DNA of 64,000 bases from Euprymna scolopes (Eukaryota), in the NCBI GenBank assembly GCA_053919585.1, contig CM132823.1; one strand, written 5' to 3'. Both the position numbers and the translations under genes were made by a program. The stretch's first letter is position 1. Each line of letters opens with the position of its first letter. The notes under the pieces were generated by a model that was not told the origin of the DNA, made no database searches, and worked only from the letters and a program-made list of their open reading frames with translations. Below, piece after piece: positions 32,301-57,924 of this stretch.

Positions 32301-34240
32301 AATCGTATACTCTATGGAAATATGAGAAGCACCAATATTTTGCCATGAAATATGAATCGTATACTCTATGGAAATATGAGAAGCACCAATATTTTGCCAT
32401 GAAATATGAATCGTATACTCTATGGAAATATGAGAAGCACCAATATTTTGCCATGAAATATGAATCGTATACTCTATGGAAATATGAGAAGCACCAATAT
32501 TTTGCCATGAAATATGAATCGTATACTCTATGGAAATATGAGAAGCACCAATATTTTGCCATGAAATATGAATCGTATACTCTATGGAAATATGAGAAGC
32601 ACCAATATTTTGCCATGAAATATGAATCGTATACTCTATGGAAATATGAGAAGCACCAATATTTTGCCATGAAATATGAATCGTATACTCTATGGAAATA
32701 TGAGAAGCACCAATATTTTGCCATGAAATATGAATCGTATACTCTATGGAAATATGAGAAGTACCAATATTTTGCTATGAAATATGAACCATATACTCTA
32801 TGGAAATATGAGAAGCACCAATATTTTGCCATGAAATATGAATCGTATACTCTATGGAAATATGAGAAGTACCAATATTTTGCCATGAAATATGAATCAT
32901 ATACTCTATGGAAATATGAGAAGCACCAATATTTTGCCATGAAATATGAATCGTATACTCTATGGAAATATGAGAAGCACCAATATTTTGCCATGAAATA
33001 TGAATCGTATACTCTATGGAAATATAAGAAGCACCAATATTTTGCCATGAAATATGAATCGTATACTCTATGGAAATATGAGAAGTACCAATATTTTGCT
33101 ATGAAATATGAATTGTATACTCTATGGAAATATGAGAAGCACCAATATTTTGCCATGAAATATGAATCGTATACTCTATGGAAATATGAGAAGCACCAAT
33201 ATTTTGCCATGAAATATGAATCGTATACTCTATGGAAATATGAGAAGTACCAATATTTTGCCATGAAATATGAATCGTATACTCTATGGAAATATGAGAA
33301 GTACCAATATTTTGCCATGAAATATGAATCGTATACTCTATGGAAATATGAGAAGCACCAATATTTTGCCATGAAATATGAATCGTATACTCTATGGAAA
33401 TATGAGAAGTACCAATATTTTGCTATGAAATATGAATCGTATACTCTATGGAAATATGAGAAGCACCAATATTTTGCCATGAAATATGAATCGTATACTC
33501 TATGGAAATATGAGAAGCACCAATATTTTGCCATGAAATATGAATCGTATACTCTATGGAAATATGAGAAGTACCAATATTTTGCTATGAAATATGAATC
33601 GTATACTCTATGGAAATATGAGAAGCACCAATATTTTGCCATGAAATATGAATCGTATACTCTATGGAAATATGAGAAGCACCAATATTTTGCCATGAAA
33701 TATGAATCGTATACTCTATGGAAATATGAGAAGAACCAATATTTTGCTATGAAATATGAATCGTATACTCTATGGAAATATGAGAAGCACCAATATTTTG
33801 CCATGAAATATGAATCGTATACTCTATGGAAATATGAGAAGCACCAATATTTTGCCATGAAATATGAATCGTATACTCTATGGAAATATGAGAAGCACCA
33901 ATATTTTGCCATGAAATATGAATCGTATACTCTATTGAAATATGAGAAGTACCAATATTTTGCTATGAAATATGAATCGTATACTCTATGGAAATATGAG
34001 AAGCACCAATATTTTGCCATGAAATATGAATCGTATACTCTATGGAAATATGAGAAGCACCAATATTTTACCATGAAATATGAATCGTATACTCTATGGA
34101 AATATGAGAAGCACCAATATTTTGCCATGAAATATGAATCGTATACTCTATGGAAATATGAGAAGCACCAATATTTTGCCATGAAATATGAATCGTATAC
34201 TCTATGGAAACCTGAGAAATACCAATATTTTGCTACAGAT
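29305..34240. repeat. Tandem satellite, 91 x 54 bp
   Basis: Unit g[c/t]accaatattttgc[c/t]atgaaatatgaa[t/c]c[g/a]tatactctatggaaatatgagaa. Unit starts at 29305 and 34219 are 4914 = 91x54 bp apart, so there is no net indel. Confidence 0.99.
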
Positions 34241-34288
34241 GACGTGACCCCCATCATTAACGTTAATGATGGGGGTCACGTCATCTGT
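34235..34288. other. Perfect 54-bp palindrome, putative parvoviral terminal hairpin
   Basis: acagatgacgtgacccccatcattaac|gttaatgatgggggtcacgtcatctgt marks the end of the viral segment. A second copy ends the third EVE at 55364-55407. Confidence 0.8.
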
Positions 34289-34977
34289 TTTTTTTTACCT
34301 GATAATTTTAAAATAAAATAGAATTGCATTGCATGGGTCCGAGCCCTGATGCGGGTAGTGCCACGGCCTAATATCATAGTCATTGCTTAATATAGTTTTT
34401 AGCTGTGACCTAATTCCTTGACCTAGTTTTGTAATTTTCAATCGTCGCTGACGCTGATTCGATGACGGTTCCTTTGAATTTCTTTAACGATCCCATGTCT
34501 GATGGTCGATCTGAAAGGGAATATCGAACATGCGAAATAATATTGAATCATGCGAAATAATATTGAACCATGCCACTGTCATATCAGTTCAAGATGCAGT
34601 ATTATAAGAACGATTTGAGTTTAGTGTATATATATAGTTTATTTACAATATGTACATCATCGTCAGTGTGTTTTAGAAAATATTTACAAAAGTCCAAGGA
34701 ATCATTGATCAGTGTCATTGAGCGTATAGTTTATCCATCGGAGTCACTGAGCACTTCCTCACATTCTAAAAATAGCTGTGACGTCGGCCCTCGTCCGGTG
34801 ATTTGTCGTAGGTACAGTGCCAATGTGTAGTTAATGTTTTTTTTTTTTTTTTGGGGGGGGGGGGGTCACGAAGATGTCGTCGTCCGGCTCCTCTGACTCA
34901 CTGAGCACTATGACCCCGGAGACCGGCGTGTCCTCGGCCAGTGTGTCCTGTGAGAAGCTCGCTGCCGCGGGGCTGGG

Positions 34978-36711
34978 TTAGCTTGGTCCTCTAGGACACC
35001 TGTGTGCTTTGCAACCGTGCGTTTTACAGTACTGTGTTGGCTGGTTTTCGTCTATTTCGCAGGCCTGTATCATCCAGTCCTCGACGTCGGAGTCGTCGGA
35101 GATTCGCACGTTTTCTACTTCTTCTCCAGCCATGAGGTCCTGGAACAGCTGTCTGCGTGCTTTCATGTATCCTGCCTGTTTGTCTGGTGACAATCCTTCC
35201 ACTGCTTGGACAGTGAAATTTGTAGATGCGGCTGGTTCTTCTATATCCTCCTCCTCCTGGAATTGGTAGGTCTGGTTCGTATAGTCCATGACGTATTGTC
35301 TCCAAACGGTTAGCCACATTGTAGGATTCAATTCTCGGACTCCCCAACCCTTTAGGGCCGGCATAGGCCTTTTGGTTTCGTATAGGAACATGCGGTTGTG
35401 CATTGCCATGCGTTCCTGGGGTACGTGTCGCCATGGGTCGTCGTTGGATGTAGAGAGACACGGTGTCCTTTCTAGGTATCGTTCGGCCTGGTGCTTTACG
35501 TTGACTGCTGTCGTTGTGCCCTCAAGTATACATTTGCCCTCCTCTACATTTTGTGGTGTAAACCACATTTCGTCTGTGTAGATAAGGGTCTTATCGACGC
35601 ACGAACCGAACGTGAAGTTGTCGGAGGCCTGACATCGCATTCGGCCGCAATTCATGAGGCCGTTCCTGATCGATCTGAGCACGTATGATTTGCCAGAGTT
35701 ACTGGGTCCCGTTATGTGGAACCCGTTCTTTTTTGCTCGTATCATGTGGCATACTTCGAACAGGTTTCTACCGAACTCAACCGGATCGAAATTGTGGTAT
35801 TGGGCCCATGCGTCGTAAATGTCCAACGACTTCTGCACTGACCAATACCTGTTACCGTCCATGCTGAAGAGGTCCTTCTTTTGACGGATCTGTTCAAATA
35901 TGGGGGTGACCTTTGTTTGGATCTGTAGGTCGCTTGCTGCCGCCTGCATGATCGGTTGAATATTTTGGGTATTGGTAAAGATGTGTTCCCACGTGTCCCG
36001 GACCTTTGTATTGGCAGATTGTTTACAGTAGAGCATGACTTTTGCCATGTCAGTACTGTTACATTTTTTCATTATGTCTAAAATGAATTTATATTTTTGA
36101 CCTCTCAGGGTCGATTTTCCAGTTAGACCTGTGTCTACGGTCGGCTCGTCCTGTTTCTTTAAGGGCTTTTCGCATATTTTTCTGTACGCGGCTAGTTGAC
36201 CGGGCGTTTCCAGGTGCCCTGCAGCTACTACTGAGCGTTTCGACGGGTCCATTGTCAGGTAACTGCAGAGTCCGTACGGGTTGTAAATCTTCTGGCATGA
36301 AATTTGGTACGGGTTGATTTGCCGTTCCGCCTGTAGTTTTTTCATTTGCACGTAACTGTGCTCACACGTAGGGTGGTTGTGGTGCCACGTGATCATGTGG
36401 AAATGGTCTACGTCTGCGCAATGTTTCAGACTGCTTGGCCCCGCTACGAGGTATACTATTATGTAGGGTCGCTGGTCGAGAATTCTGGCGAAGTACCCGT
36501 GGGTAGCGTTTGATGGCTGTAACGTTATCGCATCCTGGTATGGTTTGGTCTCCGTAGTTCCTGGACTTAGTCTGAATTCTCCCTCGGTTTCCCAGCGGTA
36601 GATCCAGGTGTAGGGACGGATTTGTTTGCCGTTGACAGTTTCTCCGTTTACTAGGTCGTTGAATTGTTGTTGTTCCTCTCTTTGGGTGTTGCTGCTGGTC
36701 GTGGCTTCCAT
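34978..36711 (-). CDS. NS1: Endogenous parvovirus NS1 (HUH nuclease + SF3 helicase), copy 1
   Basis: HUH DHFHMI, catalytic-Tyr-like YGLCSYL, Walker A GPSNSGKS, Walker B IYTDEM, motif C STSN. TATAAAA ~45 nt upstream (36757-36763). Confidence 0.9.
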   Translation of the reverse strand: MEATTSSNTQREEQQQFNDLVNGETVNGKQIRPYTWIYRWETEGEFRLSPGTTETKPYQDAITLQPSNATHGYFARILDQRPYIIVYLVAGPSSLKHCADVDHFHMITWHHNHPTCEHSYVQMKKLQAERQINPYQISCQKIYNPYGLCSYLTMDPSKRSVVAAGHLETPGQLAAYRKICEKPLKKQDEPTVDTGLTGKSTLRGQKYKFILDIMKKCNSTDMAKVMLYCKQSANTKVRDTWEHIFTNTQNIQPIMQAAASDLQIQTKVTPIFEQIRQKKDLFSMDGNRYWSVQKSLDIYDAWAQYHNFDPVEFGRNLFEVCHMIRAKKNGFHITGPSNSGKSYVLRSIRNGLMNCGRMRCQASDNFTFGSCVDKTLIYTDEMWFTPQNVEEGKCILEGTTTAVNVKHQAERYLERTPCLSTSNDDPWRHVPQERMAMHNRMFLYETKRPMPALKGWGVRELNPTMWLTVWRQYVMDYTNQTYQFQEEEDIEEPAASTNFTVQAVEGLSPDKQAGYMKARRQLFQDLMAGEEVENVRISDDSDVEDWMIQACEIDENQPTQYCKTHGCKAHRCPRGPS

Positions 36712-36879
36712 CCTGACGGTCTGGAGCGAGTGCCTGATCTGTGGTGGATGTGCGTCTTTTATAGCACGTTATTGCGTCGTAAGAAATTAGAATCTGCTGC
36801 CGGTTTAGTAATTATCTGTAGAAGTAATTGAATTATGCTGACGTTGATGAATTTGAAAAATAGGTAATTGATTTCTGCC

Positions 36880-37150
36880 CTATTTGTTTACGAAACGCCC
36901 ATAAGGCATGCCGAATATTTGACCGTTGTGGTCCCATATGTGTGTGCCGTGATTATGAAGCATTCCTTTCGCTGATTGGCCGTGGAAATGTCTATTGGGC
37001 GGTACAATGGTGTGGTATTCGTAACTGAAGTCCGCCGATGTTGCTGATAGTGCTTGTTTGTGGGTGGTGACTGGGACCTTCTGCGGGTGGATAAGTGCGT
37101 CACAGACTATTTCAATTTCTAGCATATAAGTTATTTCGAAGTTGAAATAT
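36880..37150 (-). pseudogene. Probable parvoviral capsid (VP) C-terminal fragment
   Basis: Open frame YFNFEITYMLEIEIV...GMPYGRFVNK* with a beta-strand pattern like the last jelly-roll strand, contiguous with the NS1 promoter. The assignment is inferential. Confidence 0.45.
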
Positions 37151-37814
37151 AAAATAGAATTGCATTGCATGGGTCCGAGCCCTGATGCGTTAAGTGCCAC
37201 GGCCTAATATCATAGTCATTGCTTAATATAGTTTTTAGTTGTGGCCTAATTCCTTGACCTAGTTTTGTATTTTTCAATCGTCGCTGACGCTGATTCGATG
37301 ATGGTTCCTTTGAATTTCTTAAACGATCCCATGTCTGATGGTCGATCTGAAAGAGAGTATCGAACATGCGAAATAATATTGAATCATGCGAAATAATATT
37401 GAACCATGCCAATGTCATATCAGTTCAAGATGCAGTATTATAAGAACGATTTGAGTTTAGTGTATATATATAGTTTATTTACAATATGTACATCATCGTC
37501 AGTGTGTTTTAGAAAATATTTACAAAAGTCCAAGGAATCATTGATCAGTGTCATTGATCGTATAGTTTTTCAATCGGAGTCACTGAGGACTTCCTCACAT
37601 TCTAAAAATAGCTGTGACGTCGGCCCTCGTCCGGTGATTTGTCGTAGGTATACTGCCAATGTGTAGTTTATTATGTTTTTTTTTTTTTTTTTGGTGTTAC
37701 GAAGTCGTCCTCGTCCGGCTCCTCCGTTTCTGAGTCGCTGAGCACTATCACTCCGGAGACGGGCGAGTCCTCTCCGACTGTGTCCTGTGAGATGCTCGGT
37801 GCTGCGGGGCTGGG

Positions 37815-39534
37815 TTAGTTTGTTACTGTAGGACATCTGTGTGCCTTGCAACCGTGTGTCTTACAGTACTGCGTCGGCTGGTTTTCGTCTATTTCGCATG
37901 TTTCAGTCATCCAGTCCTCGACGTCGGAGTCGTCTGATATGCGCAGGTTTTGTACCTCCTCTCCTGCCATGAGGTCCTTGAAGAGCTGTCTCCGAGCTTT
38001 CATGTATCCTGCCTGTTTGTCCGGTGACAGGCCTTCTACTGCTTGGACAGTGAAGTTTGTAGATGCGGCTGGTTCGTCTATATCCTCCTCCTCCTGGAAT
38101 TAGTACGTCTGGTTCGTATAGTCCATGACGTATTGTCTCCAGACGGTTAGCCACATGGTTGGATTTAGTTCTCGGACTCCCCAACCTTTTAGGGCAGGCA
38201 TGGGCCTTTTGGTCTCGTACAGGAACATTCGGTTGTGCATTGCCGTTCGTTCAAGGGGTCGTCGTTACTTGTAGACAGGCATGGTGTTCTCTCTAAGTAT
38301 TGTTCCGCCTGATGCTTTACGTTTACTGCTGTTGTAGTACCCTCCAGGATGCACTTTCCCTCCTCTACATTCTGTGGTGTGAACCACATTTCGTCCGTGT
38401 AGATGAGGGTCTTGTCCACGCAGGATCCGAACGTGAAGTTGTCGGAGGCCTGACATCGCATCCGGCCGCAGTTCATGAGGCCGTTCCTGATCGACCTCAG
38501 CACGTACGATTTGCCGGAGTTACTTGGTCCTGTTATGTGGAACCCGTTCTTTTTTGCGCGTATCATATGGCAGACCTCGAATAGGTTTCTTCCGAACTCC
38601 ACTGGATCGAAGTTATGATGTTGGGCCCACGCGTCGTAAATGTCCAACGACTTTTGCACTGACCAATACCTGTTACCGTCCATGCTGAAGAGGTCCTTCT
38701 TTTGACGGATCTGTTCGAATATGGGTGTGACCTTTGTTTGGATCTGTAGGTCGCTTGCTGCCGCCTGCATGATCGGTTGAATATTTTGGGTATTGGTAAA
38801 GATGTGTTCCCACGTGTCCCGGACCTTTGTATTGGCAGATTGTTTACAGTAGAGCATGACTTTTGCCATGTCAGTACTGTTACATTTTTTCATTATGTCT
38901 AAAATGAATTTATATTTTTGACCTCTCGGGGTCGATTTTCCAGTTAGACCTGTGTCTACGGTCGGCTCGTCCTGTTTCTTTAAGGGCTTGTCGCATATTT
39001 TTCTGTACGCGGCTAGTTGACCGGGCGTTTCCAGGTGCCCTGAAGCTACTACTGAGCGTTTCGACGGGTCCATTGTCAGGTAACTGCAGAGTCCGTACGG
39101 GTTGTAAATCTTCTGGCATGAAATTTGGTACGGGTTTATCTGTCGTTCCGCCTGTAGTTTTTTCATTTGCACGTAACTGTGCTCGCATGTAGGGTGGTTG
39201 TGGTGCCACGTGATCATGTGGAAGTGGTCCACGTCTGCGCAATGTTTCAGACTGCTTGGCCCCGCTACGTGGTATACTATTATGTAGGGTTGCTGGTCGA
39301 GAATTCTGGCCAAGTACCCGTGGGTAGCGTTTGCTGGCTGTAACGTTAGCGCATCCTGGTATGGTTTGGTCTCCGTCGTCCCCGGCTTTAGGCTGAATTC
39401 TCTCTCGGTTTCCCAGCGATAGATCCAGGTGTACGGCCGGATTTGTTTGCCGTTGACTGTTTCTCCGTTAACTAAGTTGTTGAATTGTTGTTGTTCCTCT
39501 CGTTGGGTGCTGCTGCTGCTGGTCGTGGCTTCCA
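37815..39534 (-). pseudogene. NS1: Endogenous parvovirus NS1, copy 2 (disrupted)
   Basis: Same motifs as copy 1. A frameshifting deletion at ~38255 removes WRHV, and there is a CAA>TAA stop at ~38100. TATA at 39581-39587. Confidence 0.9.
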
Positions 39535-39689
39535 TCCTGACGGTCTGGAGCGAGTGCTTGATCTGTGGTTTATGTGCGTCTTTTATAGCACGTATATGCG
39601 TCGTAAGAAATAAGAATCTGATGCCGGTTTTGTAATTATCTCTGTAAGTAATTGAATTATGCTGACGTTGATGAATTTTGAAAGTAGCT

Positions 39690-42600
39690 GGGTTATTCCA
39701 GCCCAATTCATCCAGCCCCGACACACCCCCTCTTGGATTTTTTTCATATTTACACCATACAAACTTTGGGTTAAAACTAAGAAATCTGCAATTTCAGCCC
39801 AGTTGGATTTCAGGAACATATTTTTTTTCACAGTTGGTTTCGGCCTGGAAATCAAAAATTGCTATCTCATGACGTAGAATTTTCGACTCCCGGCGTTTTA
39901 CAAAATTTGCATTTTTGTTGCAAAAAATAAAGCTCTGGAGCTAAATATTCACACATATAAGGTTTTGAGGGCAAGGAATCCAAAAATCATGGTTAGAAAG
40001 ATGGCAAATGAGAGGAAGTACCTTATTTTTACCATTTTAGGTGGTGCCGCAGCACTTTTTTAGAGCTTGTTTGGGGCGATATTTTATTGAGAAAAAAACA
40101 TAACTGTGGTGCTTTGCCAGACTTCTCCTTTGGATTTTTAAAGTGACAATGGGTTGGAAATTACAAAAATCAAATAAAACCTTTCGGCATATTTGACATT
40201 TCCAGACACTAAAGCCTCAAAATTGGCATTTTTATAAAAATTTAAGGATTTTTTGGTGAATTTGGCAACAATCTAATCTTAAGTTATGATCAATATCTAG
40301 AGCTGAAAAAAGACTTGGATCGGCTCATTATAGCCCATTTTCATAATATAATGTCAAATTACATCATATAAAAGGATATGGACCCCTACTTCACAGTCAA
40401 AATGGACAAAAAAATAGTCGAAAATAAAAGACTGATGCATAATCTAGTTTATCATAAGAAAAACTGTCAAACAAATATAAAACAGACATTTGTTATAACT
40501 CCAACTATCGACTTAATCTGTCAAAATAGTTCTGAGTCTTATTTTTCTCCTCCTTGGTGATGAAATATGTTCTACCATTCACTGAAATACTTGGGGTCTG
40601 CACTCTCATAACGACCTTGCTTAGTGGAATATAGCCTCTATCCCTATTAGTTGGCCAGTGGAATTGATGTGATGGTCCATGTGGATGCAGGAATTTGCAA
40701 GTAAGATCTTTCTCTTCCCTGTTGACACTCTCAATCAATGCTAACCACCAATATCCATCAAAAATGCAAGTAATGTAGTCATTGCATTTGAGCAACTCCA
40801 GAGTTTCATCTAGCGGCGTAGGCATGTCCAGGAAAGAATGGTCGATAAAGATCGTTGTGTCAGCACTCAGTTGCTTGCCCTGAATAGTAAACTGAGAAGT
40901 TGGTTTGAAATAGTGACAGCTCCTTGTACCAGGCACAGTATCTCCCAGTTTATATCTCATTTGAAGTTTCTCTCGAACTGAAACCATGTCTTCTTTGTCG
41001 ATCTTTAGAAACATGATACCAGTGATCGATGATCTGCAAAAGTCTGCAACAGCATGAAAAGTGAGTATTTGGTCTTTTATTGGCCTTTGCAAGCTGGCAC
41101 GGAGAACTTTGCGTTTGACAGCCCCACCAATTCCATCACAGGGTGATTTGCCATGGCTAGTTGCAAAAAATGCCCAAGTTGCATCAATTCCAAAATCTGA
41201 TGAGTGATGGCAAAGGTTAATAAATGCTTTGAAGTTTTTATATTGGGCAGCACAGCCATCGCTGAAGTACTCTACACTCTTGATCCAGGGAAATTTCTCT
41301 TTGATGTACAACATCACCATTCTTTGCAGTTCATGCACAAAACAGGTGTCATGCTCAAGGTCATCTGAAATGATGCATAATGAGATCTGTTGAAGTTTAC
41401 CATTGTTATCTTTGTAATAAATTACCACTGGATGTATGGTACACTGGTCTTTGTTCCAGTGATATCCCTGGATCTCATCTTGCACCACGTAGTGATAATT
41501 TTCCGCAAAGTCCAAGAGAAGTATACATTCGGTCTCAGTTATTTCTTCTCTTCTCTTTTTTAGATACTGCGCTTGGCTCTTTGCTGTGAAGGAATGGGTC
41601 GTTAGATTATCAACATTGTATACCAATATCTCTATGAAGTAATCTACATCAGCCATCTGTGTCCGTAGCATTGTCCTATCCACACTCTCCCACTGACTAT
41701 ATGACATCTCACTGTCAATTTCCAATTCAGTAAATTTATCTCTGATATACTTCTCTAGAGCAGGGAAACCTGGGCATTTAGGACAACGGTGGACCATACA
41801 TTCAAGACTATTGGTGTCGCAAACTACCAAGGCCATCAAATCTTTGTAAGTGATATTAAAATTGGGATTTTCAGTTGGTACATTAGCAGCACTCTCATCT
41901 CTGGATTCTTCAGCTTTCCTTCTGAGCTGAGTCTTGACAGTTGAAACAAAGCAGTCAACAAGCAATTTGGTATTTTGATGGTGGGTGCAAACACAAACTG
42001 AATGAGAACCTGATGTCAAGACGGTGACGCACCATTTTGGACGGAGCTCACAGAACTTTGAAAGACCTATTTTGTGTTCAGGATAGCTTTCTTTGTAAGC
42101 TACATAAAGCTCCTTAAGATTGCATAATAGGAGCCGTTTCTGGACATGAACTTTATTACCAATGCTCACAAAATCTTTCCCTCCAGGCATTAACCGTGAA
42201 AATTCATTGTCCTCATAGAAAGCCAAGACAGAATTGATAACCTCTTTTGAGAGACCTCTCCCCTTCTTTTTCTGTGGCAATGAAAGAATACCTCGATCCT
42301 TTTTCAGTTGCCGTGCTTCACGTACTATATATTCAGAGACATTGAAATATTCAGACACCTCTTTTCGAGACCAACTTTCCGGAGCTAAAGTCATCAACTG
42401 GATCCTCTCACTGGTTTTCATTTCTTTATTCTCAAGTTTGTCCTTCATTGCATCCAACAAACAATCATAATCTTTTGCCTTTGCCACTAAATCCGTTTGA
42501 CTCGTTTGGCTGCTAATAGGGCTTCCTAATTCAGGGCTAGAGATGTTAAGGACTTTGACAGCTGCCTCTACTTGCATTTCATAGTTTCTTTCTAATTTCT

Positions 42601-43858: not shown

Positions 43859-44180
43859 ACGCTCCGCTGCCGTTGTCGTTCGCGACTGTGCTCGCCTCCG
43901 AATCGACTTCCATACCTGCTTCGCAGCTAGCAGTGTAAGTAGGATCAAGTTTAATTCGTTTAGGTGGGGGATCGAAGTAGTCGTCCAGTCCCAGGTAATG
44001 CTTTGCTCTGAGTGCCCCTCGCGATAAAGCTCCCAACACACCTGTTCCAGCAGAGTCCTTGTAGAATTGGTCATCTGCTTCTTTGGTCTTGCCTTTTCCG
44101 TAGTTGAAATCGTGTCTTTTTGCGGCCCAGTCCAAGCGATTTAGGGGAGGCAGGTATTTTTTGTAGTCGAGGTTTTTGCC
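43857..44180 (-). pseudogene. VP1: Parvoviral VP1-unique region fragment with phospholipase A2 domain
   Basis: GKNLD...PLNRLDWAAKRHDFNY...EADDQF (parvoviral PLA2 HDxxY motif), then NLS-like PPPKRIKL and a Gly/Ser-rich start. Confidence 0.85.
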
Positions 44181-45130
44181 CTGAATAAAACCTGAATCGC
44201 ATACTCCATGGAAACATGAGAAATACCAATATTTTGCTACAGATAAGATGCCATCATCCAAACACGAATCGCATTGGAATTCGGATGACGAAGCAAATTC
44301 TTGTTACATTAATTCCTTCGACAGAATCTGTGAAACAACAAAGTTTTTCCAGTTCACAAATTCTTCATGACATTTCAGACATTTGCAATTTGTTTTGGCT
44401 CTGTCCAAAGTTTTGATGAAACATGACTCACATACTCCATGAAAACATGAGAAGCATTTGAAGAGTCTAGTTGTCTGTAATACCTTTTTTCTTTTCTTTG
44501 TGAGTTTATTTTATTGTTTCTAAATGTATAGTGACATTTTTTAAATATAATTTTCTTTTTTCATCCTGTTTTCTGTCGTGTGTGTTTGTATTAGTTTTTT
44601 CTTAATTGTTTTGTGTATTTTCTTCTTAATCATCAGTCTTTCATATATTGTGTAATTGGTGCTCCCATCCTCATGTGTGAATGGTAGGTGTATGATGCAA
44701 AGGTCGCATAAGAAACCAAACATACCGATATATAAGAAATAAATGTAGATTTATTTAGATAAAAATGCAAGAGAGAATAAGTGACAATAAGAGTTTGGTA
44801 AAAAGAGATGATTGGAAATGTTGCTTGTGGTATTGGAATGCGTTATTGTCAATCTTTACTTGTTAATAGTCCAGCGAAAAGAGAAAGAAATCTATACAAA
44901 AGGAAGTGACGTAGTTGCATTGCCCTCTGGTGGCAAGGCATGTGTTGTGTTTGTGAGTTTGTTGGCTGGGAAATTTCAATTCCCACAAATTCTCATCTTC
45001 TCCAGCAAGAGTTAATAAGTTATTGTGGACAGTGACAGAAGGAGACAGATCTGTCTTCCTTGCCAGTTGAGTCCCCTGATGATTTTTGTGTTTCTACAAC
45101 TGGCTAAAAATAGTTCCTAAGAGACAAATG
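44173..45130 (-). repeat. Duplicate of host segment 20047-21058 (RING/B-box fragment + motif-rich upstream region)
   Basis: Colinear high-identity match, sandwiched between viral VP and NS1 fragments. Confidence 0.9.
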
Positions 45131-45630: not shown

Positions 45631-45782
45631 GTTTGTCCTCTCCCTCATGAATTGGCACTTCGGCAATTTAAGCCTCAGGCCGTGCTCCCTCAGGCTGCTC
45701 ATCACCTGCCGCAGGTGGACATAGTGCTCCTCCGGGTTCCTTGAAAATATCAGGATGTCGTCTAGGTAGGCCATGGCAAAGT
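45631..45782 (-). mobile_element. Gypsy RT fragment duplicated from 49570-49721
   Basis: FAMAYLDDILIFSRNPEEH...KCQFMRERT, essentially identical to the downstream copy. Confidence 0.9.
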
Positions 45783-49564: not shown

Positions 49565-49998
49565 AGGTAGTTTGTCCTCTCCCTCATGAATTGGCACTTC
49601 GGCAATTTAAGCCTCAGGCCGTGCTCCCTCAGGCTGCTCATCACCTGCCGCAGGTGGACATAGTGCTCCTCCGGGTTCCTTGAAAATATCAGGATGTCGT
49701 CTAGGTAGGCCATGGCAAAGTCCTACATGCCCCCCAGCACAATGGACATCAACTGAGTAAACACCCCCGGAGCGTTAGCCCACCCAAAAGGCATCATTCT
49801 AAAATGAAATAGCCCGGCATGACAAGTTAAAGGCGGCCTTCTCCCGATCCCTCTTCTTTAGGCTCACCTGCCAATAACCCGACCTCAAGTCCAGGATGGA
49901 GAAGCACGTGGATCTCCCTAGCAAAGCCAAGATATCATCAATCAGGGGAAGGGGCACCGCCAACAGCTTGGTGACGGCATTCAGCCGCCGGAAATCTA

Positions 49999-51324
49999 CA
50001 GGGTGGCCGAAAAGTCCCAGGACGCTATACATGTATTTTTAATAAAACACAGTATTTTTTAATGAAACACAAAACATATACATTCAACAAAAAAAGAGAA
50101 CTTTATTAGAAACAAAGCAGAAAACAACTAGAGTAATTTAGTGGTCTAGGGGATCAGTATGTTGGCCCTCGTTGTTCTTGCACAATTCCATTCGCCTCCA
50201 GGTTCTTTGTGCCATTTTTTTTAGAGAATTCCTTGATACGCTAGCAAAAGCTGCAATAATCGCATGCTTTAGCTGATCAATGGTTTCGTATCTAATACCA
50301 GAAACTTGACCTTTAATTAAACCCCATAATGAGTTGTCTGGAGTGGTCAAGTCGGGGCTTCGTGGTTGCCAAGCAAAAGAATTTGATCCGCGCCCAATCC
50401 ATCGATCACGAAAATCTGCATTTAGCAGCGCTCTCACAGGAAGTGCATAATGTGCGGGTGCACCATCTTGCTGTAGCCATACACGATCCTTAATACCAAG
50501 TTCTATTAACTTGGGAATGAACCAGTTTCTAATCATGTTGGCATATGATTCCTGATTGACATTGCCATCAAAGAAATAAGGACCAATCAAATGTTCAGAT
50601 GTCAATGCAGCCCAAATCATGACATGTGGAGGATTATTTTCAACTTCTTCTTTGTAAAAGGGGTTTTCTTTAGCCCAGAAATATATGTTTCGACTTTTAG
50701 AACTTTTATAAATGGCGCATTCATCGCTGAATATTATCTTTCTGTGATTTCTTGGACCATCAGGAAAGCGTTTTAAAAATTTCTCACAGAATTTTTTTCT
50801 TCGATCCATATCTTCATCTGACAACTGATTTACCGAGATGGGCTTATAAGCTTTGACATCCAAGTCCTTTTTCATATGATCCATCATGGTAGCCCTTGGT
50901 ATTCCAAGTTCAGCAGAACGTTTTCTGGTGGATTTCTTGGGAGACTGTTGCAGTGATTCTTGAACACCAGCACACGTTTCCTTTCGTGTTTTAGGCCTGC
51001 CACTTCTTGCCTGATCCAGAACGCTACCTGTTTCAAAAACTTTCTTCTCCCACAGATACAGATTACTTCTTGATAGCACGGGCTTTCCAAATCTTTCTGT
51101 GAAAGCACTTCGAACATCTTCCATAGTCATGTCATTCCTGATGCGGTCGTGAACCCAAACAGCAGCAATTAAGCGCTCCTCAACAGTAAATACACTGATG
51201 TCAGTCATAACCTGAAAAAATAAATGAAATAAATTGTTTTAACAACATTAGAATATTAAAATCAATCATATTTAACAGCATTAAAATATTAAAAATAGTG
51301 TCCTGGGACTTTTCGGCCACCCTG
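49999..51324 (-). mobile_element. Tc1/mariner transposon, rosa (DD41D)-like, full length
   Basis: TIR cagggtggccgaaaagtcccaggac with TA TSD. Splits Gypsy RT at FCV|DFR. Confidence 0.95.
50138..51208 (-). CDS. DDxD transposase (DD42D by my count), intact 356 aa
   Basis: RSGRP, FSDE, QQDGAPAH, WQPRSPDLTTPD. Confidence 0.92.
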   Translation of the reverse strand: MTDISVFTVEERLIAAVWVHDRIRNDMTMEDVRSAFTERFGKPVLSRSNLYLWEKKVFETGSVLDQARSGRPKTRKETCAGVQESLQQSPKKSTRKRSAELGIPRATMMDHMKKDLDVKAYKPISVNQLSDEDMDRRKKFCEKFLKRFPDGPRNHRKIIFSDECAIYKSSKSRNIYFWAKENPFYKEEVENNPPHVMIWAALTSEHLIGPYFFDGNVNQESYANMIRNWFIPKLIELGIKDRVWLQQDGAPAHYALPVRALLNADFRDRWIGRGSNSFAWQPRSPDLTTPDNSLWGLIKGQVSGIRYETIDQLKHAIIAAFASVSRNSLKKMAQRTWRRMELCKNNEGQHTDPLDH

Positions 51325-53741
51325 TACACAGAATCGGTGCCCCCCATCCTTTTTCTCGACCACTACTATCGGGAAGCTCCAGGGAGAGCCTGACCTCTCT
51401 ATAACTCCTGTTTCCAGCGTTACATTTACCGCTTCTCTCACTAGTTTTCTCTTATGAAGCGGTGTTCTATAAGGCCTTAGTTTAATGGGCAGGTGTCCAC
51501 CCGTGTCTATCCCCACCTCTATGGTCCGGGTCTGTCCCAGCTCCTTATCTGTCATGGCTATCACATCCCTGTTGTCTCTCAGTAACTGCCTGATTTCGTA
51601 CCTATATCTATCCGGTACTACCCGTACCTTCTCCATCTGCCTCAGAGGGCGGGTGTAGGCTAACTTTTCTCCCTTCCCGATGGTCACGTTTGTATTCGTG
51701 GTGTTTGCCACCAGTACTGGGACTGTCTCGCATCCCTGAACCACGCCCTCGCTCAGTCACTCCCTCCTCGTTGTCTGTATACTTCTCGGTCGGGTCTATC
51801 TGAAACACCCTTCCTTCCAGTCCATCCGTGCCGTCCACCTTGCCCCCACAGGACATGACTGTCCGTGGGGGAAGACTCTCGTCTCCCTCGGCCTTCACCG
51901 GAAGAGGAGCGTATTCTGTGAACCCCCCCCCCCAGTGGGATCTCCACCCCTCCCACCGTCAAGGTGGCCGGGCTGAAACTCAGTGTAGCTCCCCTCACCC
52001 TGATCCAGTCTCCACCCAGAATCATCTCGCTACACAGTCTGGATACCACATAGAAGGGAAATCTCACCCTTTGTTTCGCTACTTGCACCGGCAGCCATAC
52101 CTTCCCCATCACTGACAGCCGACTACCGTCGGCCTGACTGACCTCTAGGTCCGACAGGTATAATTTTCTCCCTCCCGCGACCGCATCATAGATCCCGCGT
52201 CTATCAACAAGATCGATGCCCCAGTGTCGACTAGTGCCTCTACCCGGGTGGTCCCTACCACCACACTACAAGTAAATTCCTTGTCTTCCGTAAGCAGGGA
52301 CAGCACCTGCGCCTTCTTCCCTTCTCGCTCTGGGGCTTCCTCCCAGTGTTCTCCCACCGTGGACATTGGGGCTGGCAGCAGCAGTCCCCTCCTGGTCTCG
52401 TCCTCCCACTCTCCCCTGCACTGCAGCGCCTCTCTCGAGGCATTGGACAGTCTGGACTCCCTCTATACATCCCAGAGTTCTCCTCCCAGGCGTGACCGCC
52501 CCTCTGGTGGGAGCAGTCCTCCCTGTGACTGGTCCTCCCACCCAGGCGGCTCTCTCAGAACTGGCAGTTGGTGGCAAGGTGGTCATCCTTGTTGCATATC
52601 CAACCTGCGAGGGGTTTAGATTTTATGGGGGCCACCCTGCTCCTTACTACCCCTGGGGAGGTCTTAGGTGGGGTACCCCGGTCATGTGTTCTCAATCCCC
52701 ATCCCTGGTTTCCCGCCACACCACACCATTGAGCTTCGTGCCCAGACTGTCCACAACGGGTGCAGCCGGGACCGGCCAGGCGGGATGATCTCCCAAGACC
52801 GGTGGCCTTCGCCCCCACAGGTCCAGCACACAAATCCAGGCCGGCCCCGGGCGAATCCTCCGGACCCATCTCATTCTGTTCCCCAGTTCCCCGCTCCTAT
52901 TTCGCGACTTCTCCCCCATTATTCTTTTCTGCAACCACGCATAGTTCTTAGCTATTTTGCGTGCTTCCTCTTGCGTGTGCGGGCCACCCTTTAGCACCTC
53001 TATCTTGGTCGCTTCGTCCTGCAATGGATCCACCATCGTGTCAACTAGCATTGCTTGGGTTGTGGGCATATCGCAGTGTTTGGTCACTGGATCCGCCAGC
53101 ACCGCCAGTTCCTGCATGCGGTTGACCAGTCCATCCACATCCTCCCCGTCGGCCATCTCTATTCGAGACAGCTCGGGCACCGCCTGCACCGTGGTCTTTT
53201 CGCTGGCGAATTTCCTCTTCACTTGATCGCGAAAATCAGACCAGGCTATGTGTGGGTTACTTTCCAAGCATTTGCATATATATTCCGAGGCCGCCCCGGT
53301 CGCCCCGTCGCAGGCCAGCAGCACCATTTCCCTCTCTGTCAAACCATAAACTAATCTTTTCTTTTCTTTGATCGCCAACCACTCCTTAACTCTCCTCGGG
53401 TCTCCCCCATATGCGGGTATGCTAACCCCCCATAATGGCCGCTCCATGGTCATCTGCAGCTCAACAGTCTGCTCTGACCCCTCCCCCATCGATTGACCCG
53501 CCCCGAATCCCTCCTGAGAATGCATTGTCATTATTTTTTTTTTTTTTTTCCACCCAATAACAGGGCTACTCCTCACCCCCTACAAGGTTGAACAGCACCC
53601 CACACAAAACACAAACAGCCGCTGAAACCGAGCAAGGTATACAAAAGAGGGAACCAGCAAAAAAAAGAAAGGACACCCGGTCTGCTGCACCTGTTTTCTT
53701 CTGCAACTGGCGGATGGTTAACGAGCTGTCCAGACTGTATA

Positions 53742-55287
53742 CAGTGCGTTACTTGCTTTATTGCAGATCACATTTTCCTTGATAACTTTATTACTAAACG
53801 TAATTAACTGAAATTTTGTACAGCTATAGAAAACACATTGATAAGTTAGTCCATAAAATTTTATCCAAATATTCTTACTATTTCAAAAGTTATAACAATT
53901 TTTGAAACATATGAAATTTTTACTGTTTCTCACTTTATTGCAACGTATTGAAAATACAGTTTAAAGGTAATAAAAGTATGAATTTATTTGTTAATTTAAT
54001 TCAAATTAGTAACAGTAACAGATATATAACCATATAGAAATCAAATACAACCCACAAAGCGTGACATTTTAACGAAAAACGAATTATTTATCAACATAAT
54101 TTCCCTTCCTTGCAATCACCTTAAACAGTCTATTATCAACAGATGAGGTTAGTTTTTTTATTTGAGAAGGTGTTATGGTCCTAGACACTTCAAGAATTTT
54201 ATTCCAAAGGGCATCTTTTGATGTGAATTGCCGTCCTCCTTCATAAACCCCTCTTTTCAGAATTGACCAAAAGTTCTCTATTGTGTTCAGAGAACAAGGC
54301 GGCCAGGTCATGAGTTTCGTCTTTGATCCACAGAGACTCAAGGTAGGATTTGATAGCTTTTGCAGCGTGAGATGGAGCGTTATCGTGCATAAAAGTAAGG
54401 CGTCTACGACGAAGAAGTGGAAGATCATCCAGCCAAGGTGACAAATGCTCCTCCAAAAACTGGATGTATGTTTGGCTGGTAAGTTTAACGCCGTCAGGCA
54501 CTCTGAAGGGTCCTAAGAGTTCATCTCCAACGATTCCAGCCCAAAACATAACTCCTCCCCCTCCTTGTTGACGCCTGATACGATATGGCATAGGATCTCC
54601 CTTAGGACTCCAAACTTTAGCCCATCCATCTGGACCATCCAGCGTGGCTCTCGATTAAAACTTGTTGAAAGTCTGTTTTCATGTATTTTTGTGCCCAAGC
54701 TATGTGTTTTTTCATGTTGGTTTGGTTCAAAGGAGGTTTTGAAATGGGTTTTACGTTTCTTGCAATTTCGTTTAAAATACTACATCTTGTTTTTCTTGAC
54801 ATTGCAGCAACGCCAGCTTTTATAAAAATAGACTTGCTGGTGTCATTTGGGTCCTTATTGACTTCTTTGCTTATTTTTCGCATGTCACGAGGAGAAATGA
54901 CCTTTCTTTTGCCCTTATCCTTACGTGGTGAAATCTTTGGCTTCTCCACAAAGGATGCCACAGTTCTTTTATCTCTACCAAGTTCTTCTGATAACTGGAG
55001 AATTGTAAGACCCTCTGCAAGACCTGCGGTTATCCTGTTCTTCTCTGGTGCAGTCAATCGTCCATTTTTAGGCATTTTTAGAACTCCTGCAATAAAGCGA
55101 GAAACAGTAAAAATTTCATCTTTTTCAAAAATTGGTATAACTTTTGAACTAGTAAGAATATTTGGATAAAATTTTATAGACTAACCTTTCAAAGTGTGTT
55201 CAATGGCTGTACAAAATTTGAATTATGTTTAGTATTAAGAAAGTTATTAAATAAAATATGATCTGCAATAAAGCAAGTAACGCACTT
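53742..55287 (-). mobile_element. Tc1 (DD34E) transposon with frameshifted transposase (54084-55075)
   Basis: TIR cagtgcgttacttgctttattgcagatca with TA flanks. GGGGVMFWAGI, FMHDNAPSH and LNTIENFW are split across frames. Confidence 0.92.
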
Positions 55288-55363
55288 TATACTAGGTGAT
55301 AGATGTCCCAAGGATAGTGAATCTAACTGGGCTCTAACATGCTCTAATAGGGTTATCAATGAT

Positions 55364-55407
55364 TGACGTGACCCCCATCATTAACATTAATGATGGGGGT
55401 CACGTCA
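55364..55407. other. Second copy of the putative viral terminal hairpin
   Basis: tgacgtgacccccatcattaacattaatgatgggggtcacgtca, with one central mismatch. Confidence 0.8.
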
Positions 55408-55858
55408 TCTGTTTTTTTTTTACCTGATAATTTTTAAATAAAATAGAATTGCATTGCATGGGTCCGAGCCCTGATGCGGGTAGTGCCACGGCCTAATATC
55501 ATAGTCATTGCTTAATATAGTTTTTAGCTGTGACCTAATTACTTGACCTACTTTTGTAATTTTCAATCGTCGCTGACGCTGATTCGATGATGGTTCGTTT
55601 GAATTTCTTTAACGATCCCATGTCTGATGGTTGATCTGAAAGAGAATATCGAACATGCGAAATAATATTGAATCATGCGAAATAATATTGAACCATGCCA
55701 ATGTCATATCAGTTCAAGATGCAGTATTATAAGAACGATTTGAGTTTAGTGTATATATATAGTTTATTTACAATATGTACATCATCGTCAGTGTGTTTTA
55801 GGAAATATTTACAAAAGTCCATAGAATCATTGATCAGTGTCATTGATCGTATAGTTTA

Positions 55859-57845
55859 TCAATCGGAGTCACTGAGCACTTCCTCACATTCTAAAAATAG
55901 CTGTGACGTCAGCCCTCGTCCGGTGATCTGTCGTAGGTACAGTGCTAATGTGTAGTTTATGATTTTTTTTTTTTTTTTTTTTTTTTTGGGGGGTCACGAA
56001 GATGTCGTCGTCAGGCTCCTCAGTCTCTGACTCACTGAGCACTATCACACCGGAGACCGGTGTGTCCTCGACGAGTGTGTCCTGTGAGAAGCTCGGCGCC
56101 GCGGGGCTGGGTTGGTTTATTCTTGTTGGGCACCTGTGTGCTTTGCAGCCGTGCGTTTTGCAGTATTGTGTTGGTTGGTTTTCGTCTATTTCGCAGGGCT
56201 GTACCATCCAGTCTTCTACGTCGGAGTCGTCGGAGATGCGCACGTTTTCTACTTCTTCTCCGGCCATAAGGTCCTGGAATAATTGTCTGCGTGCCTTGCA
56301 GTACCCTGCTTGTTTGTCTGGCGACAACCCTTCCACTGCCTGCACAGTGAAGTGTGTCGATGCCGCGGGTTCCTCTATGTCCTCCTCCTCTTGGAACTGG
56401 TATGTTTGGTTTGTGTAGTCCATGACGTATTGTCTCCATACGGTCAACCACATCGTCGGATTCAATTCACGGACTCCCCAACCTTTTAGTGCCGGCATCG
56501 GTCGTTTTGTTTCGTATAGGAACATTCGGTTGTGCATTGCCGTTCGTTCCTGGGGTACGTGCCGCCATGGATCGTCGTTGGAAGTCGAGAGACACAGTGT
56601 TCTTTCGAGGTAGCGTTCTGCCTGGTGTTTGACGTTCACCGCAGTTGTCGTCCCTTCCAGGATGCATTTTCCTTCCTCTACATTTTGTTGGGTAAACCAC
56701 ATTTCGTCAGTGTATATTAATGTTTTGTCTACGCATGATCCGAACGTGAAGTTGTCGGATGCTTGGCAGCGCATCCTGCCGCAGTTCATGAGGCCGTTCC
56801 TGACCGATCTAAGCACGTACGATTTGCCCGAGTTACTGGGTCCCGTTATGTGGAACCCGTTCTTTTTCGCCCGTATCATGTGGCAAACCTCGAACAAGTT
56901 TCTGCCGAACTCTACTGGGTCGAAATTGTGATACTGCGACCATGCGTCGTAAATGTCTAACGACTTTTGGACGGTCCAATACCTGTTTCCGTCCATGCTG
57001 AAGAGGTCCTTTTTCTGTCTTATTTGTTCGAAGATTGGTGTCACCTTCGTTTGTATTTGTAAGTCGCTAGCTGCCGCCTGCATAATGGGTTGTATGTTTT
57101 GCGTGTTAGTGAAGATGTGGTCCCACGTTTCACGCACTTTCGCACTGGCAGATTGTTTGCAGTAGAGCATGACTTTAGCCATGTCCGTACTGTTACATTT
57201 TCGCATGATCTCGAGGATAAACTTGTATTTCTGTCCTCTGAGGGTCGATTTTCCAGTCAGGCCTGTGTCTACTGTTGGTTCCTCTGGTGTCTTTAATGGC
57301 TTGTCGCAGATTCTTCTGTAAGTGGCGAGTTGCCCGGGCGTCTCCAGGTGTCCTGCAGCTACCACTGAGCGTTTTGCCGGGTCCATCGTCAGGTAACTGC
57401 AGAGACCGTACGGGTTGTAGATCTTTTGGCAGGAGATTTGGTAAGGGTTGATTTGCCGTTCGCTTTGTAGTTTCTTCATTTGCACGTAAGTGTGCTCACA
57501 TGTCGGGTGGTTGTGGTGCCACGTGATCATGTGGAAATGGTCTACGTCTGCGCAGTGTTTTAAGCTGCTTGGTCCTGCTACGTGATATACGACTATGTAG
57601 GGACGCTGGTCGAGAATTCTGGCGAAGTAACCGTGGGTGGCGTTAGATGGCTGTAAGGTTATGGAATCCTGGTATGGTTTGGTTTCTGTAGATCCTGGAC
57701 TTAGTTTGAATTCTCCCTCGGTTTCCCAACGGTAGATCCAGGTGTAGGGACGGATCTGTTTGCCGTTGACAGTTTCTCCGTTCACCAGGTCGTTGAATTT
57801 TTGTTGTTCCTCTCTTTGGGTGCCGCTGCTGGTCGAGCCTTCCAT
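55859..57845 (-). CDS. NS1: Endogenous parvovirus NS1, copy 3 (near intact; 1-nt frameshift in an A25 run)
   Basis: All NS1 motifs present and no internal stops. With 24 instead of 25 A the frame would end ...INYTLALYLRQITGRGLTSQLFLECEEVLSDSD*. TATA at 57891-57897. Confidence 0.9.
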
Positions 57846-57924
57846 CCTGACGGTCTGGAGCGAGTGCCTGAACTCTGGTAGATGTGCGTCTTTTATAGCG
57901 CGTTAATGTGTCGTAAGAAATTAG

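What the first reader, a model, noticed from the sequence alone, without database searches (positions are those of the whole stretch)
34235..57924. Repeated capture of distinct strains of one parvovirus at one locus (possible antiviral archive)
Seen: four NS1 copies have nearly the same protein but differ heavily at third codon positions. For example, the CILEGTTTAVNVKH codons differ among copies 1, 2 and 3. Inference: divergence happened under purifying selection in replicating virus, so these are separate integrations of different strains rather than duplications after insertion. All are in the same orientation, consistent with serial acquisition of antisense immune memory against a ssDNA virus.
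Basis: partly seen in the sequence, partly recalled or inferred. Interest (0 to 1): 0.85.

Follow-up and report, generated by a model that had tools for sequence, protein, structure and literature searches.

The report
Cluster of endogenous parvovirus NS1 copies
A 24-kb, transposon-filled stretch of an unidentified AT-rich animal genome holds five pieces of at least three diverged lineages of one unclassified parvovirus group, all on the same strand; this is a clean example of a known kind of feature (viral DNA lodged in a possible small-RNA "memory" locus), not a new kind.

Summary
Three long NS1 units (c1 34235-37155, c2 37146-39708, c4 55364-57924) and one 501-nt NS1 fragment (c3 45127-45631) lie on the minus strand. 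Their proteins are 88-96% identical. Nearly all nucleotide differences are synonymous: dN/dS is 0.04-0.08, dS is 0.38-1.25, and c3 is saturated.

The divergence therefore arose in a replicating virus before integration. Flanks and end points indicate at least three integration events: c2+c1, c3, and c4.

Relatives on about 4-kb contigs show the source. It is an unclassified parvovirus clade with the gene order VP, then NS1, then a right-end hairpin. The long window copies are right halves of that genome, and c1 and c4 keep the terminal hairpin. Two small VP pieces are also present.

All copies are young. c4 is unbroken, and c1 and c2 carry a few stops or frameshifts.

Every recognisable transposon gene in the window is also on the minus strand, which is the layout of a one-strand piRNA cluster. 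The "antisense archive" reading is therefore plausible. No small-RNA data were available to test it, and parvovirus copies in piRNA clusters are already described. c1 and c2 are joined directly and share a 99-100% identical block, so they are not cleanly independent.

Verdict: a new member of a known kind, of moderate interest.

The parts
29305..34233 (.). 54-bp satellite array (about 91 units, 97% alike). It is host DNA that abuts the hairpin end of c1.
   Evidence: Tandem Repeats Finder. Single units of the same sequence form the end of a dispersed repeat of about 1 kb elsewhere in the window.
34235..34288 (-). c1 right-end terminal hairpin: a perfect 27+27 nt palindrome. Its outermost 8 nt are also the continuation of the host repeat, giving microhomology at the junction.
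   Evidence: the repeat finder. DNA fold: 25-bp stem, z -6.3 for the terminal 406 nt. Junction comparison.
34289..34761 (-). c1 3' non-coding region, with a poly(A) signal and a tandem 20-nt direct repeat. It is 95-100% identical among c1, c2 and c4.
   Evidence: Alignment; sliding identity.
34762..36711 (-). c1 NS1 gene. It is broken: 2 premature stops and no frameshift relative to c4.
36712..36882 (-). c1 NS1 upstream region with a conserved TATA box.
   Evidence: Alignment.
36883..37155 (-). C-terminal piece (about 90-99 codons, open) of the inferred capsid (VP) gene, directly upstream of the c1 promoter. It is joined to the 3' end of c2.
   Evidence: 88% aa identity and 74% nt identity to the ORF upstream of NS1 in Logan contig L005. 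Differences by codon position are 4/3/30.
37146..37597 (-). c2 3' non-coding region. It stops some 30-50 nt short of the terminal hairpin, which is absent.
37598..39535 (-). c2 NS1 gene. It is broken: 2 frameshifting indels and 2 stops.
39536..39708 (-). c2 NS1 upstream region with TATA box. Homology to c1 ends here.
43858..44165 (-). Fragment of the N-terminal (VP1-unique, phospholipase-A2-like) part of the capsid gene, of the c3/L005 lineage. It is open over 102 codons.
   Evidence: 87% nt identity to L005 2-179. Weak Pfam PF08398 match, E 0.006-0.015, below cut-off. Weak match to the HD motif region of the L010 VP1 (E 0.024).
44173..45130 (.). Host dispersed repeat lying between the VP1u fragment and the c3 NS1 fragment.
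   Evidence: 89.6% identical to 20047-21059; partial copies at 16.0, 16.9, 19.0 and 26.9 kb.
45127..45631 (-). c3: NS1 fragment of 167 codons (1 stop), from a different lineage. Its upstream end abuts a reverse-transcriptase fragment.
   Evidence: It is 90.7% identical to L005 but 75-79% identical to c1, c2 and c4.
55364..55407 (-). c4 right-end terminal hairpin (21+21 nt palindrome, outer arm slightly shorter than in c1), followed by non-viral DNA.
55408..55883 (-). c4 3' non-coding region.
55884..57845 (-). c4 NS1 gene: intact, 653 codons plus stop. The HUH nuclease motif and Walker A/B/C helicase motifs are present.
57846..57924 (-). c4 NS1 upstream region with TATA box. Homology ends about 80 nt upstream of the start codon.
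40505..43240 (-). Context: intact 911-codon ORF of a widespread, multi-copy, transposon-like family. It has no Pfam domain.
46658..48805 (-). Context: Transib-type (RAG1-like) transposase ORF.
   Evidence: PF12940, E 9e-8.
50138..51208 (-). Context: Tc1/mariner-type DDE transposase ORF.
   Evidence: PF13358, E 4e-5, below cut-off.
52692..53576 (-). Context: retrotransposon gag-like ORF (weak match).
   Evidence: PF03732, E 0.003.
53737..55292 (-). Context: Tc1-like element bounded by 205-nt inverted repeats, with a Tc3-type HTH ORF. It ends about 70 nt from the c4 hairpin.
61952..63994 (-). Context: Ty3/gypsy pol ORF (RT, RNase H, integrase). It runs off the window.
22110..23897 (-). Context: hAT transposase ORF.

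Best explanation
The region is a cluster of young endogenous parvoviral elements. The source is an unclassified clade of (probably invertebrate) parvoviruses. Its roughly 4-kb genome carries the capsid gene upstream of NS1 on the same strand and ends, about 300-500 nt after NS1, in a terminal hairpin. Lineages of this virus diverged while replicating, under strong purifying selection on NS1 and on the capsid. At least three times a genome fragment became joined to germline DNA here, probably by end joining. There are three blocks: c2+c1 (head to tail), c3 plus a VP1u fragment (rearranged and next to a reverse-transcriptase fragment), and c4. Since insertion the copies have decayed neutrally for only a short time. 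All pieces, and all recognisable transposon genes around them, lie on the minus strand. The likeliest meaning (inferred, not shown) is that the stretch is a one-strand piRNA cluster transcribed from the plus strand, so that it would yield piRNAs antisense to NS1 mRNA. Shown: viral origin, pre-integration divergence, several integration events, recency, and strand uniformity. Inferred: the piRNA-cluster identity and any antiviral effect.
For: Viral identity: Pfam Parvo_NS1 matches, AAV Rep/NS1 helicase structures, and invariant HUH histidines and Walker A/B/C residues across 12 relatives. Source clade and layout: VP1 (PLA2; PDB capsid VP1 E 2.6e-10) lies upstream of NS1 in L008, L010 and L011. 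VP C-terminal pieces lie upstream of NS1 in L001, L004, L005 and in the window at 36883-37155. L009 has a terminal hairpin about 310 nt after NS1, matching c1 and c4. Named relatives are unclassified 'parvoviridae sp.' plus one clam genome protein. Divergence before insertion: dN/dS is 0.047, 0.079 and 0.042, with dS 0.80, 0.38 and 1.25 (Fisher p<=1e-49). The same third-position bias appears for c3 vs L005 (7/3/34) and for the VP piece vs L005 (4/3/30). GC3 is 0.56-0.62 in a genome of about 30% GC. Separate events: c1 and c4 end at the hairpin against different non-viral DNA, the long copies have three different 5' limits, and no viral homology is found in the flanks. c3 belongs to another lineage. 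Recency: 0, 2 and 4 breaks in c4, c1 and c2. Strand uniformity: 8 of 8 recognisable transposon ORFs and all 5 viral pieces are on the minus strand, and none of 19 plus-strand ORFs tested has a Pfam match below E 0.01. Taking about 11 independent blocks gives p about 0.001. Precedent: Parvoviridae-derived elements are among the commonest in arthropod genomes and are enriched in piRNA clusters (10.1101/396382). Parvovirus (IHHNV) clusters described as piRNA-like are reported in Penaeus monodon (PMC12287923).
Against: No small-RNA, transcript or population data could be consulted, so the piRNA step rests on layout alone. An intron of a plus-strand gene would also favour antisense insertions. c1 and c2 are joined without host DNA and share a 99-100% block, so the number of events could be two or three rather than four. 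All three long copies are cut at the 5' side within one stretch of about 460 nt that preserves the NS1 promoter and gene (chance about 0.01 under uniform breakage). Simple random capture does not explain this. The 3' non-coding region is 95-100% identical although synonymous sites are 19-39% different. This needs either strong cis constraint in the virus or homogenisation after insertion. The host and the genome-wide number of such copies are unknown, so 'one locus' cannot be tested against chance.
Confidence: 0.7

Rival explanations
1. There was one integration of a mixed head-to-tail concatemer, formed from co-infecting lineages before insertion. Transposon insertions later split it into the present blocks.
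For: c2 and c1 are joined directly: the c2 3' region runs into a VP C-terminal piece and then the c1 promoter. All pieces share one orientation. The transposon ORFs between the blocks are intact and so probably young.
Against: c1 and c4 each end exactly at the terminal hairpin, next to non-viral DNA. The stretches flanking c2 (5'), c4 (both sides) and c3 have no viral homology. Transposons landing in a concatemer would cut at arbitrary internal points. c3 is rearranged and abuts a reverse-transcriptase fragment.
Confidence: 0.13
2. The copies are a host gene family derived from one old NS1 capture. It was duplicated in place and kept under purifying selection for a host function.
For: c4 is intact, with TATA box and poly(A) signal. 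All three long copies keep the promoter and the whole gene, and their 5' cuts cluster. The abstract of 10.64898/2026.07.29.741575 links endogenous densoviral derivatives in aphids to a host trait.
Against: c1 and c2 are broken. Homology between copies stops at viral landmarks and no host flank is shared. A capsid piece shows the same synonymous-biased divergence from L005, which points to selection in virions. c3 is closer to a sequence from another sample than to its neighbours. GC3 is far from host composition.
Confidence: 0.06
3. The 2.6-kb NS1-plus-hairpin unit is itself a mobile element that spreads within the genome, and the divergence reflects subfamilies of that element.
For: There are three units of similar extent that encode only NS1 and have a terminal hairpin. 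Several relatives sit on Logan contigs of only 1.4-2.6 kb that hold NS1 and little else.
Against: Relatives on contigs of about 4 kb carry a capsid gene. VP C-terminal coding sequence lies upstream of NS1 in c1, L001, L004 and L005, so the short units are truncated genomes. Only one terminus is present, the 5' limits differ, and no target-site duplication was seen.
Confidence: 0.05
4. The copies are duplicates made after a single insertion and have since drifted apart neutrally.
For: c1 and c2 are in tandem. All copies share one orientation.
Against: dN/dS is 0.04-0.08 at dS 0.4-1.25. An intact 653-codon frame in c4 is incompatible with that much neutral change.
Confidence: 0.02
5. Assembly artefact: reads of an exogenous virus were stitched into host sequence.
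For: PMC12287923 reports such artefacts for near-identical parvovirus copies in shrimp assemblies.
Against: There are no N runs between 18.2 kb and the window end. Four mutually diverged copies carry disabling changes. The c1 junction lies in a host repeat with microhomology. A host repeat lies between c3 and the VP1u piece.
Confidence: 0.03

Closest known systems
Endogenous viral elements inside piRNA clusters of arthropods (Aedes and others)
   Same: Virus-derived pieces lie embedded among transposon remnants. They are reported to be enriched in piRNA clusters and to yield primary piRNAs. Parvoviridae is one of the commonest source families (10.1101/396382).
   Different: Here no small-RNA evidence exists. 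The pieces are large (whole NS1 gene, 3' region and terminal hairpin), nearly intact, and come from several lineages of one DNA virus clade. The well-studied mosquito cases are mostly fragments of RNA viruses (own knowledge).
IHHNV-derived element clusters in Penaeus monodon
   Same: These are parvovirus-derived, recent, and clustered, and they have been proposed as piRNA-like antiviral loci (PMC12287923).
   Different: That is a different parvovirus group: IHHNV has NS genes before VP and no PLA2 domain (PMC11357303; gene order from own knowledge). The copies here are co-oriented, ordered units from lineages up to 25% apart.
Unclassified 'Parvoviridae sp.' from bird-associated metagenomes, contigs of about 4 kb (L008, L010, L011), and a clam (Mactra antiquata) genome protein
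   Same: They share the NS1 family (19-21% identity over full length for 9 of the 11 aligned relatives; invariant HUH and Walker residues). They also share the layout VP, then NS1, then hairpin.
   Different: They are only distantly related. The close relatives (50-90% identity) are unnamed Logan contigs from unidentified samples.
Head-to-tail concatemers and Rep-dependent site-specific integration of adeno-associated virus (own knowledge)
   Same: The c2-c1 junction looks like a concatemer joint with the hairpins deleted. A resident copy keeps the region next to the hairpin, with its direct repeats.
   Different: No nick site or NS1-binding site has been defined here. c1 joins host DNA through 8-nt microhomology, which points to end joining.
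Densovirus-derived NS1 sequences in aphids and flatworms
   Same: NS1-only endogenous copies occur, sometimes intact (abstracts of 10.64898/2026.07.29.741575 and PMC13055364).
   Different: Those are described as old, host-inherited or co-opted. Here the copies are young, partly broken, and differ by pre-integration divergence.

Membership tests
Parvoviridae NS1/Rep | SF3 helicase domain with Walker A, B and C motifs | tested here: met
   Pfam PF01057 scores 58-66 bits (cut-off 20) in c1, c2 and c4. AAV Rep40/68 and NS1 structures match at E 3.5e-8 to 5e-5. The Walker A G/K, the Walker B E and other helicase residues are invariant, and the Walker A N/S and the motif C N are at least 90% conserved, in 12 sequences.
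Parvoviridae NS1/Rep | N-terminal HUH nuclease motif | tested here: met
   The two histidines (residues 103 and 105 of c4) are invariant across 12 relatives. The catalytic tyrosine motif was not assigned with certainty.
Parvoviridae (virus family) | Capsid gene with jelly-roll VP, often with a PLA2 domain in VP1u | tested here: inconclusive
   The window holds only two small pieces. The PLA2 match is below the Pfam cut-off (E 0.006-0.015). In the distant relatives L008 and L010 the upstream ORF carries PF08398 and matches solved VP1 (E 2.6e-10). The L005 upstream ORFs have no significant similarity to those VPs.
Parvoviridae (virus family) | Linear ssDNA genome of about 4-6 kb with terminal hairpins | tested here: inconclusive
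   A right-end hairpin is present in c1, c4 and L009. No left end was seen. Relatives' contigs are 3.9-4.4 kb. Strandedness is not testable from sequence.
Classified parvovirus subfamilies and genera | Gene layout with NS genes before VP on one strand, or NS and VP on opposite strands (own knowledge of the classified genera) | tested here: not met
   VP lies upstream of NS1 on the same strand, with only 19-200 nt and no hairpin between them, in L005, L008, L010, L011 and upstream of c1. No NS1 phylogeny against classified genera was made.
Endogenous viral element | Viral sequence contiguous with host DNA, with loss of coding integrity | tested here: met
   Junctions lie with a host satellite or repeat and with other non-viral DNA. 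Breaks are present in c1, c2 and c3. Germline fixation is not testable.
One-strand piRNA cluster | Dense transposon remnants in uniform orientation | tested here: met
   8 of 8 recognisable transposon ORFs and 5 of 5 viral pieces are on the minus strand.
One-strand piRNA cluster | Abundant 24-32 nt, 5'-U small RNAs from one strand, and a long precursor transcript | not testable with these tools
   No small-RNA or RNA-seq data are available, and the host is unidentified.

The most novel reading that the evidence does not exclude
The locus may be a running, heritable record of an arms race fought at the nucleotide level. piRNAs from a resident NS1 copy would select for synonymous recoding of the viral NS1 message. 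The recoded lineages would then be captured again at the same place, perhaps helped by the origin-like right end of the resident copy acting as a landing site, as the direct c2-c1 joint hints. This would explain three things: synonymous sites that are 19-39% different, a 3' region lying mostly beyond the poly(A) signal that stays 95-100% identical, and copies that pile up in one orientation.
Probability: 0.08. Interest if true: 0.85.

Novelty: new member of a known kind. Interest (0 to 1): 0.48.

Why it matters
The locus shows unusually clearly that several diverged lineages of one DNA virus entered the germline at one transposon-rich place within a short time. If small RNAs confirm a piRNA cluster, it would be a tidy natural case for studying how sequence-based heritable immunity keeps up with a diversifying ssDNA virus. 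Separately, the copies and their relatives outline a parvovirus clade with the capsid gene ahead of NS1. I could not find this layout described, and it would be of interest to parvovirus taxonomy.

Tried and rejected
Host identification failed:
- Exact look-ups of two window proteins found nothing.
- The 911-codon transposon-like ORF has no homologue above 60% identity; the named ones come from a sea spider, a spider, a thrips and Hydra.
- Three full-text searches for sample or assembly accessions gave no paper.
- Rfam gave only a 5S rRNA-like match, and no tRNAs were found.

Searches for an exogenous counterpart also failed:
- IMG/VR gave one distant 7.9-kb contig.
- JGI metagenomes gave nothing.

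I searched for more viral pieces in the window using the NS1 frames, the L005 VP region and the VPs of L008, L010 and L011. None were found beyond the five listed.

A hairpin at the 5' side of c1 is not present (z +1.1). A phrase search for a described VP-before-NS layout gave no hits.

I rejected hypermutation or editing as the cause of divergence, because the changes are an even mix of transitions and transversions confined to synonymous sites. I rejected an mRNA-derived (retro-copied) origin, because the copies include the promoter and extend past the poly(A) signal to the hairpin.

Full report
**Setting.** The window is AT-rich animal-type DNA, 22-37% G+C outside the viral and transposon parts. 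It has three N runs, all before 18.2 kb. Positions 29305-34233 are a 54-bp satellite of about 91 units. From 34 kb onward the sequence is a mosaic of transposon genes and parvovirus-like sequence.

**Checking the observation.** Open frames on the minus strand from three places match Pfam Parvo_NS1 well above the cut-off. The intact frame of c4 (653 codons) also matches the helicase of solved AAV Rep40/68 and an NS1 structure.
- tblastn with the window's own frames finds four NS1-like regions and no more.
- blastn defines three units of about 2.6 kb: c1 34240-36884, c2 37146-39708 and c4 55364-57924. They are 85-91% identical. A 501-nt fragment, c3 45128-45631, is 75% identical in DNA but 88% identical in protein.
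It differs at 8-12 of its 14 third positions and nowhere else.

**Selection.** I computed Nei-Gojobori counts separately for each in-frame piece and added only the counts.

| Pair | dN/dS | dS |
|---|---|---|
| c1 vs c4 | 0.047 | 0.80 |
| c1 vs c2 | 0.079 | 0.38 |
| c2 vs c4 | 0.042 | 1.25 |

For c3, synonymous sites are saturated at pN 0.08. Fisher tests give p from 1e-49 to 1e-124. The substitutions are an even mix of transitions and transversions. GC3 is 0.56-0.62 in every copy, far from host composition. The divergence therefore arose under purifying selection on a working protein, not after insertion.

**What the virus is.**
- A full HMMER scan gave 944 relatives. Close ones (50-90% identity) are unnamed Logan contigs.
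- Named ones are unclassified 'parvoviridae sp.' from bird metagenomes and a protein in a clam genome.
- The HUH histidines and Walker residues are invariant across 12 sequences.
- Relatives on contigs of about 4 kb have a capsid gene upstream of NS1 on the same strand, 19-140 nt apart. It carries a PLA2 domain and matches solved VP1 at E 2.6e-10 (L008, L010). L011 has a homologous upstream ORF.
- L009 ends in a hairpin about 310 nt after NS1.
- L005, from SRR24189489, has VP-like ORFs and then NS1. It matches the window's c3 (86-91%), a 300-nt piece at 43858-44165 (87%), and the 270 nt just upstream of the c1 promoter (74% nt, 88% aa). The last piece differs from L005 at codon positions 4/3/30, so it is coding sequence under selection.
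- L001 and L004 also carry this C-terminal piece ahead of NS1.

The long window copies are therefore right halves of a genome laid out as VP, NS1, 3' non-coding region, hairpin.

**Anatomy of the copies.** Each long copy has a conserved TATA box, the NS1 gene, a poly(A) signal and a 3' non-coding region. c1 and c4 also have a terminal palindrome: 27+27 nt in c1 and 21+21 nt in c4.

c2 lacks the palindrome. It runs straight into the VP C-terminal piece that precedes c1.

The 5' limits differ: inside VP for c1, about 170 nt before the start codon for c2, and about 80 nt for c4.

Break counts:
- c4: none.
- c1: two stops.
- c2: two frameshifting indels and two stops.
- c3: one stop in 167 codons.
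- Both VP pieces are open.

**Junctions.** c1 joins a host repeat, the last unit of the satellite, through 8 nt that belong to both partners. The flanks of c2 (5'), c4 (both sides), c3 (upstream) and the VP1u piece (downstream) show no viral homology by blastn or tblastx against all relatives held.

A host repeat (44173-45130, also found at 20047-21059) lies between c3 and the VP1u piece. I compared those two pieces apart and did not join them.

**How many events.** In the block shared by all four copies, c1 vs c2 is 96.4% identical, c4 is 83% to both, c3 is 75-79% to the others, and c3 is 90.7% to L005. That gives at least three lineages.

Along the unit, c1 vs c2 is a mosaic. It is 99-100% identical over about 400 nt and 80-95% elsewhere. 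This indicates recombination between lineages or gene conversion between the tandem copies.

I count three blocks as separate events. I leave open whether c2 and c1 were one concatemer or two events.

**Two unexplained regularities.**
- The 3' non-coding 500 nt is 95-100% identical among c1, c2 and c4, while the 5' non-coding part is 82-92% and third positions are 19-39% different. A 77-nt piece of this region in L007 is also better conserved (84-87%) than NS1 (73-76%). That favours cis constraint in the virus, but homogenisation is not excluded.
- All three 5' limits fall within about 460 nt and spare the NS1 promoter. The chance of this is about 0.01 under uniform breakage.

**Context and function.** All eight recognisable transposon ORFs lie on the minus strand. 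They are hAT, the 911-codon family, an RT fragment, Transib, two Tc1-like, gag, and gypsy pol. None of the plus-strand ORFs of 90 codons or more that I tested has a domain match.

With the three viral blocks this makes about 11 of 11, p about 0.001. This is the layout of a one-strand piRNA cluster. Parvoviridae-derived elements are reported as common and enriched in such clusters (10.1101/396382), and parvovirus clusters of this sort have been proposed in shrimp (PMC12287923).

I therefore regard the antisense-archive reading as the likeliest function, at roughly even odds. Nothing here shows small RNAs or protection.

**Novelty.** The kind of feature, viral elements gathered in a transposon-rich and probably piRNA-producing locus, is known. 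This is a new and unusually legible member of it. The VP-before-NS1 layout of the source clade may be undescribed. My phrase search found nothing, but that is weak evidence.

Noticed in passing
L005, L008, L010, L011; window 36883-37155: In this parvovirus clade the capsid gene lies upstream of NS1 on the same strand, with a short spacer and no hairpin between them. This is unlike the layouts I know for classified parvoviruses. A phrase search found no description of it.
   Followed up: partly
window 34289-34816, 37146-37650, 55408-55940: The 3' non-coding region is 95-100% identical among c1, c2 and c4 although synonymous sites are 19-39% different. It contains a tandem 20-nt direct repeat and mostly lies beyond the poly(A) signal.
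   Followed up: partly
window 36790-37155, 39708, 57924: The 5' limits of the three long copies fall within about 460 nt of the viral genome and all spare the NS1 promoter and gene. The chance is about 0.01 under uniform breakage.
   Followed up: partly
window 34233-34242: There is an 8-nt microhomology between the outer hairpin arm of c1 and the host repeat it joins, suggesting end joining.
   Followed up: yes
window 29305-34233; 15995-16247, 16903-17011, 19049-19188, 20047-21059, 26879-27178, 44173-45130: The 54-bp satellite unit is also the terminal part of a dispersed repeat of about 1 kb, so the array seems to have grown from that repeat's end.
   Followed up: partly
window 45298-45828 and 49570-49721: An open frame fuses a reverse-transcriptase fragment (YLDD region) in frame to the c3 NS1 fragment. 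The 152 nt of RT sequence next to c3 recur 100% identical 4 kb away.
   Followed up: no
window 40505-43240: An intact 911-codon ORF has no Pfam or PDB match but has hundreds of homologues, many on contigs of 3-4 kb, in a sea spider, spiders, a thrips and Hydra. It is probably an uncharacterised DNA-transposon protein.
   Followed up: partly
window 9857-9971 (-): A 5S rRNA match (53.8 bits, full length) lies in otherwise repeat-like DNA.
   Followed up: no
window 53737-55292: A Tc1-like element with 205-nt terminal inverted repeats (87% alike) ends about 70 nt from the c4 hairpin.
   Followed up: no
L007 1-77 and 102-1050: A Logan contig from another sample joins a piece of the NS1 end/3' region directly to mid-NS1. 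Rearranged copies of this clade therefore exist elsewhere too.
   Followed up: no
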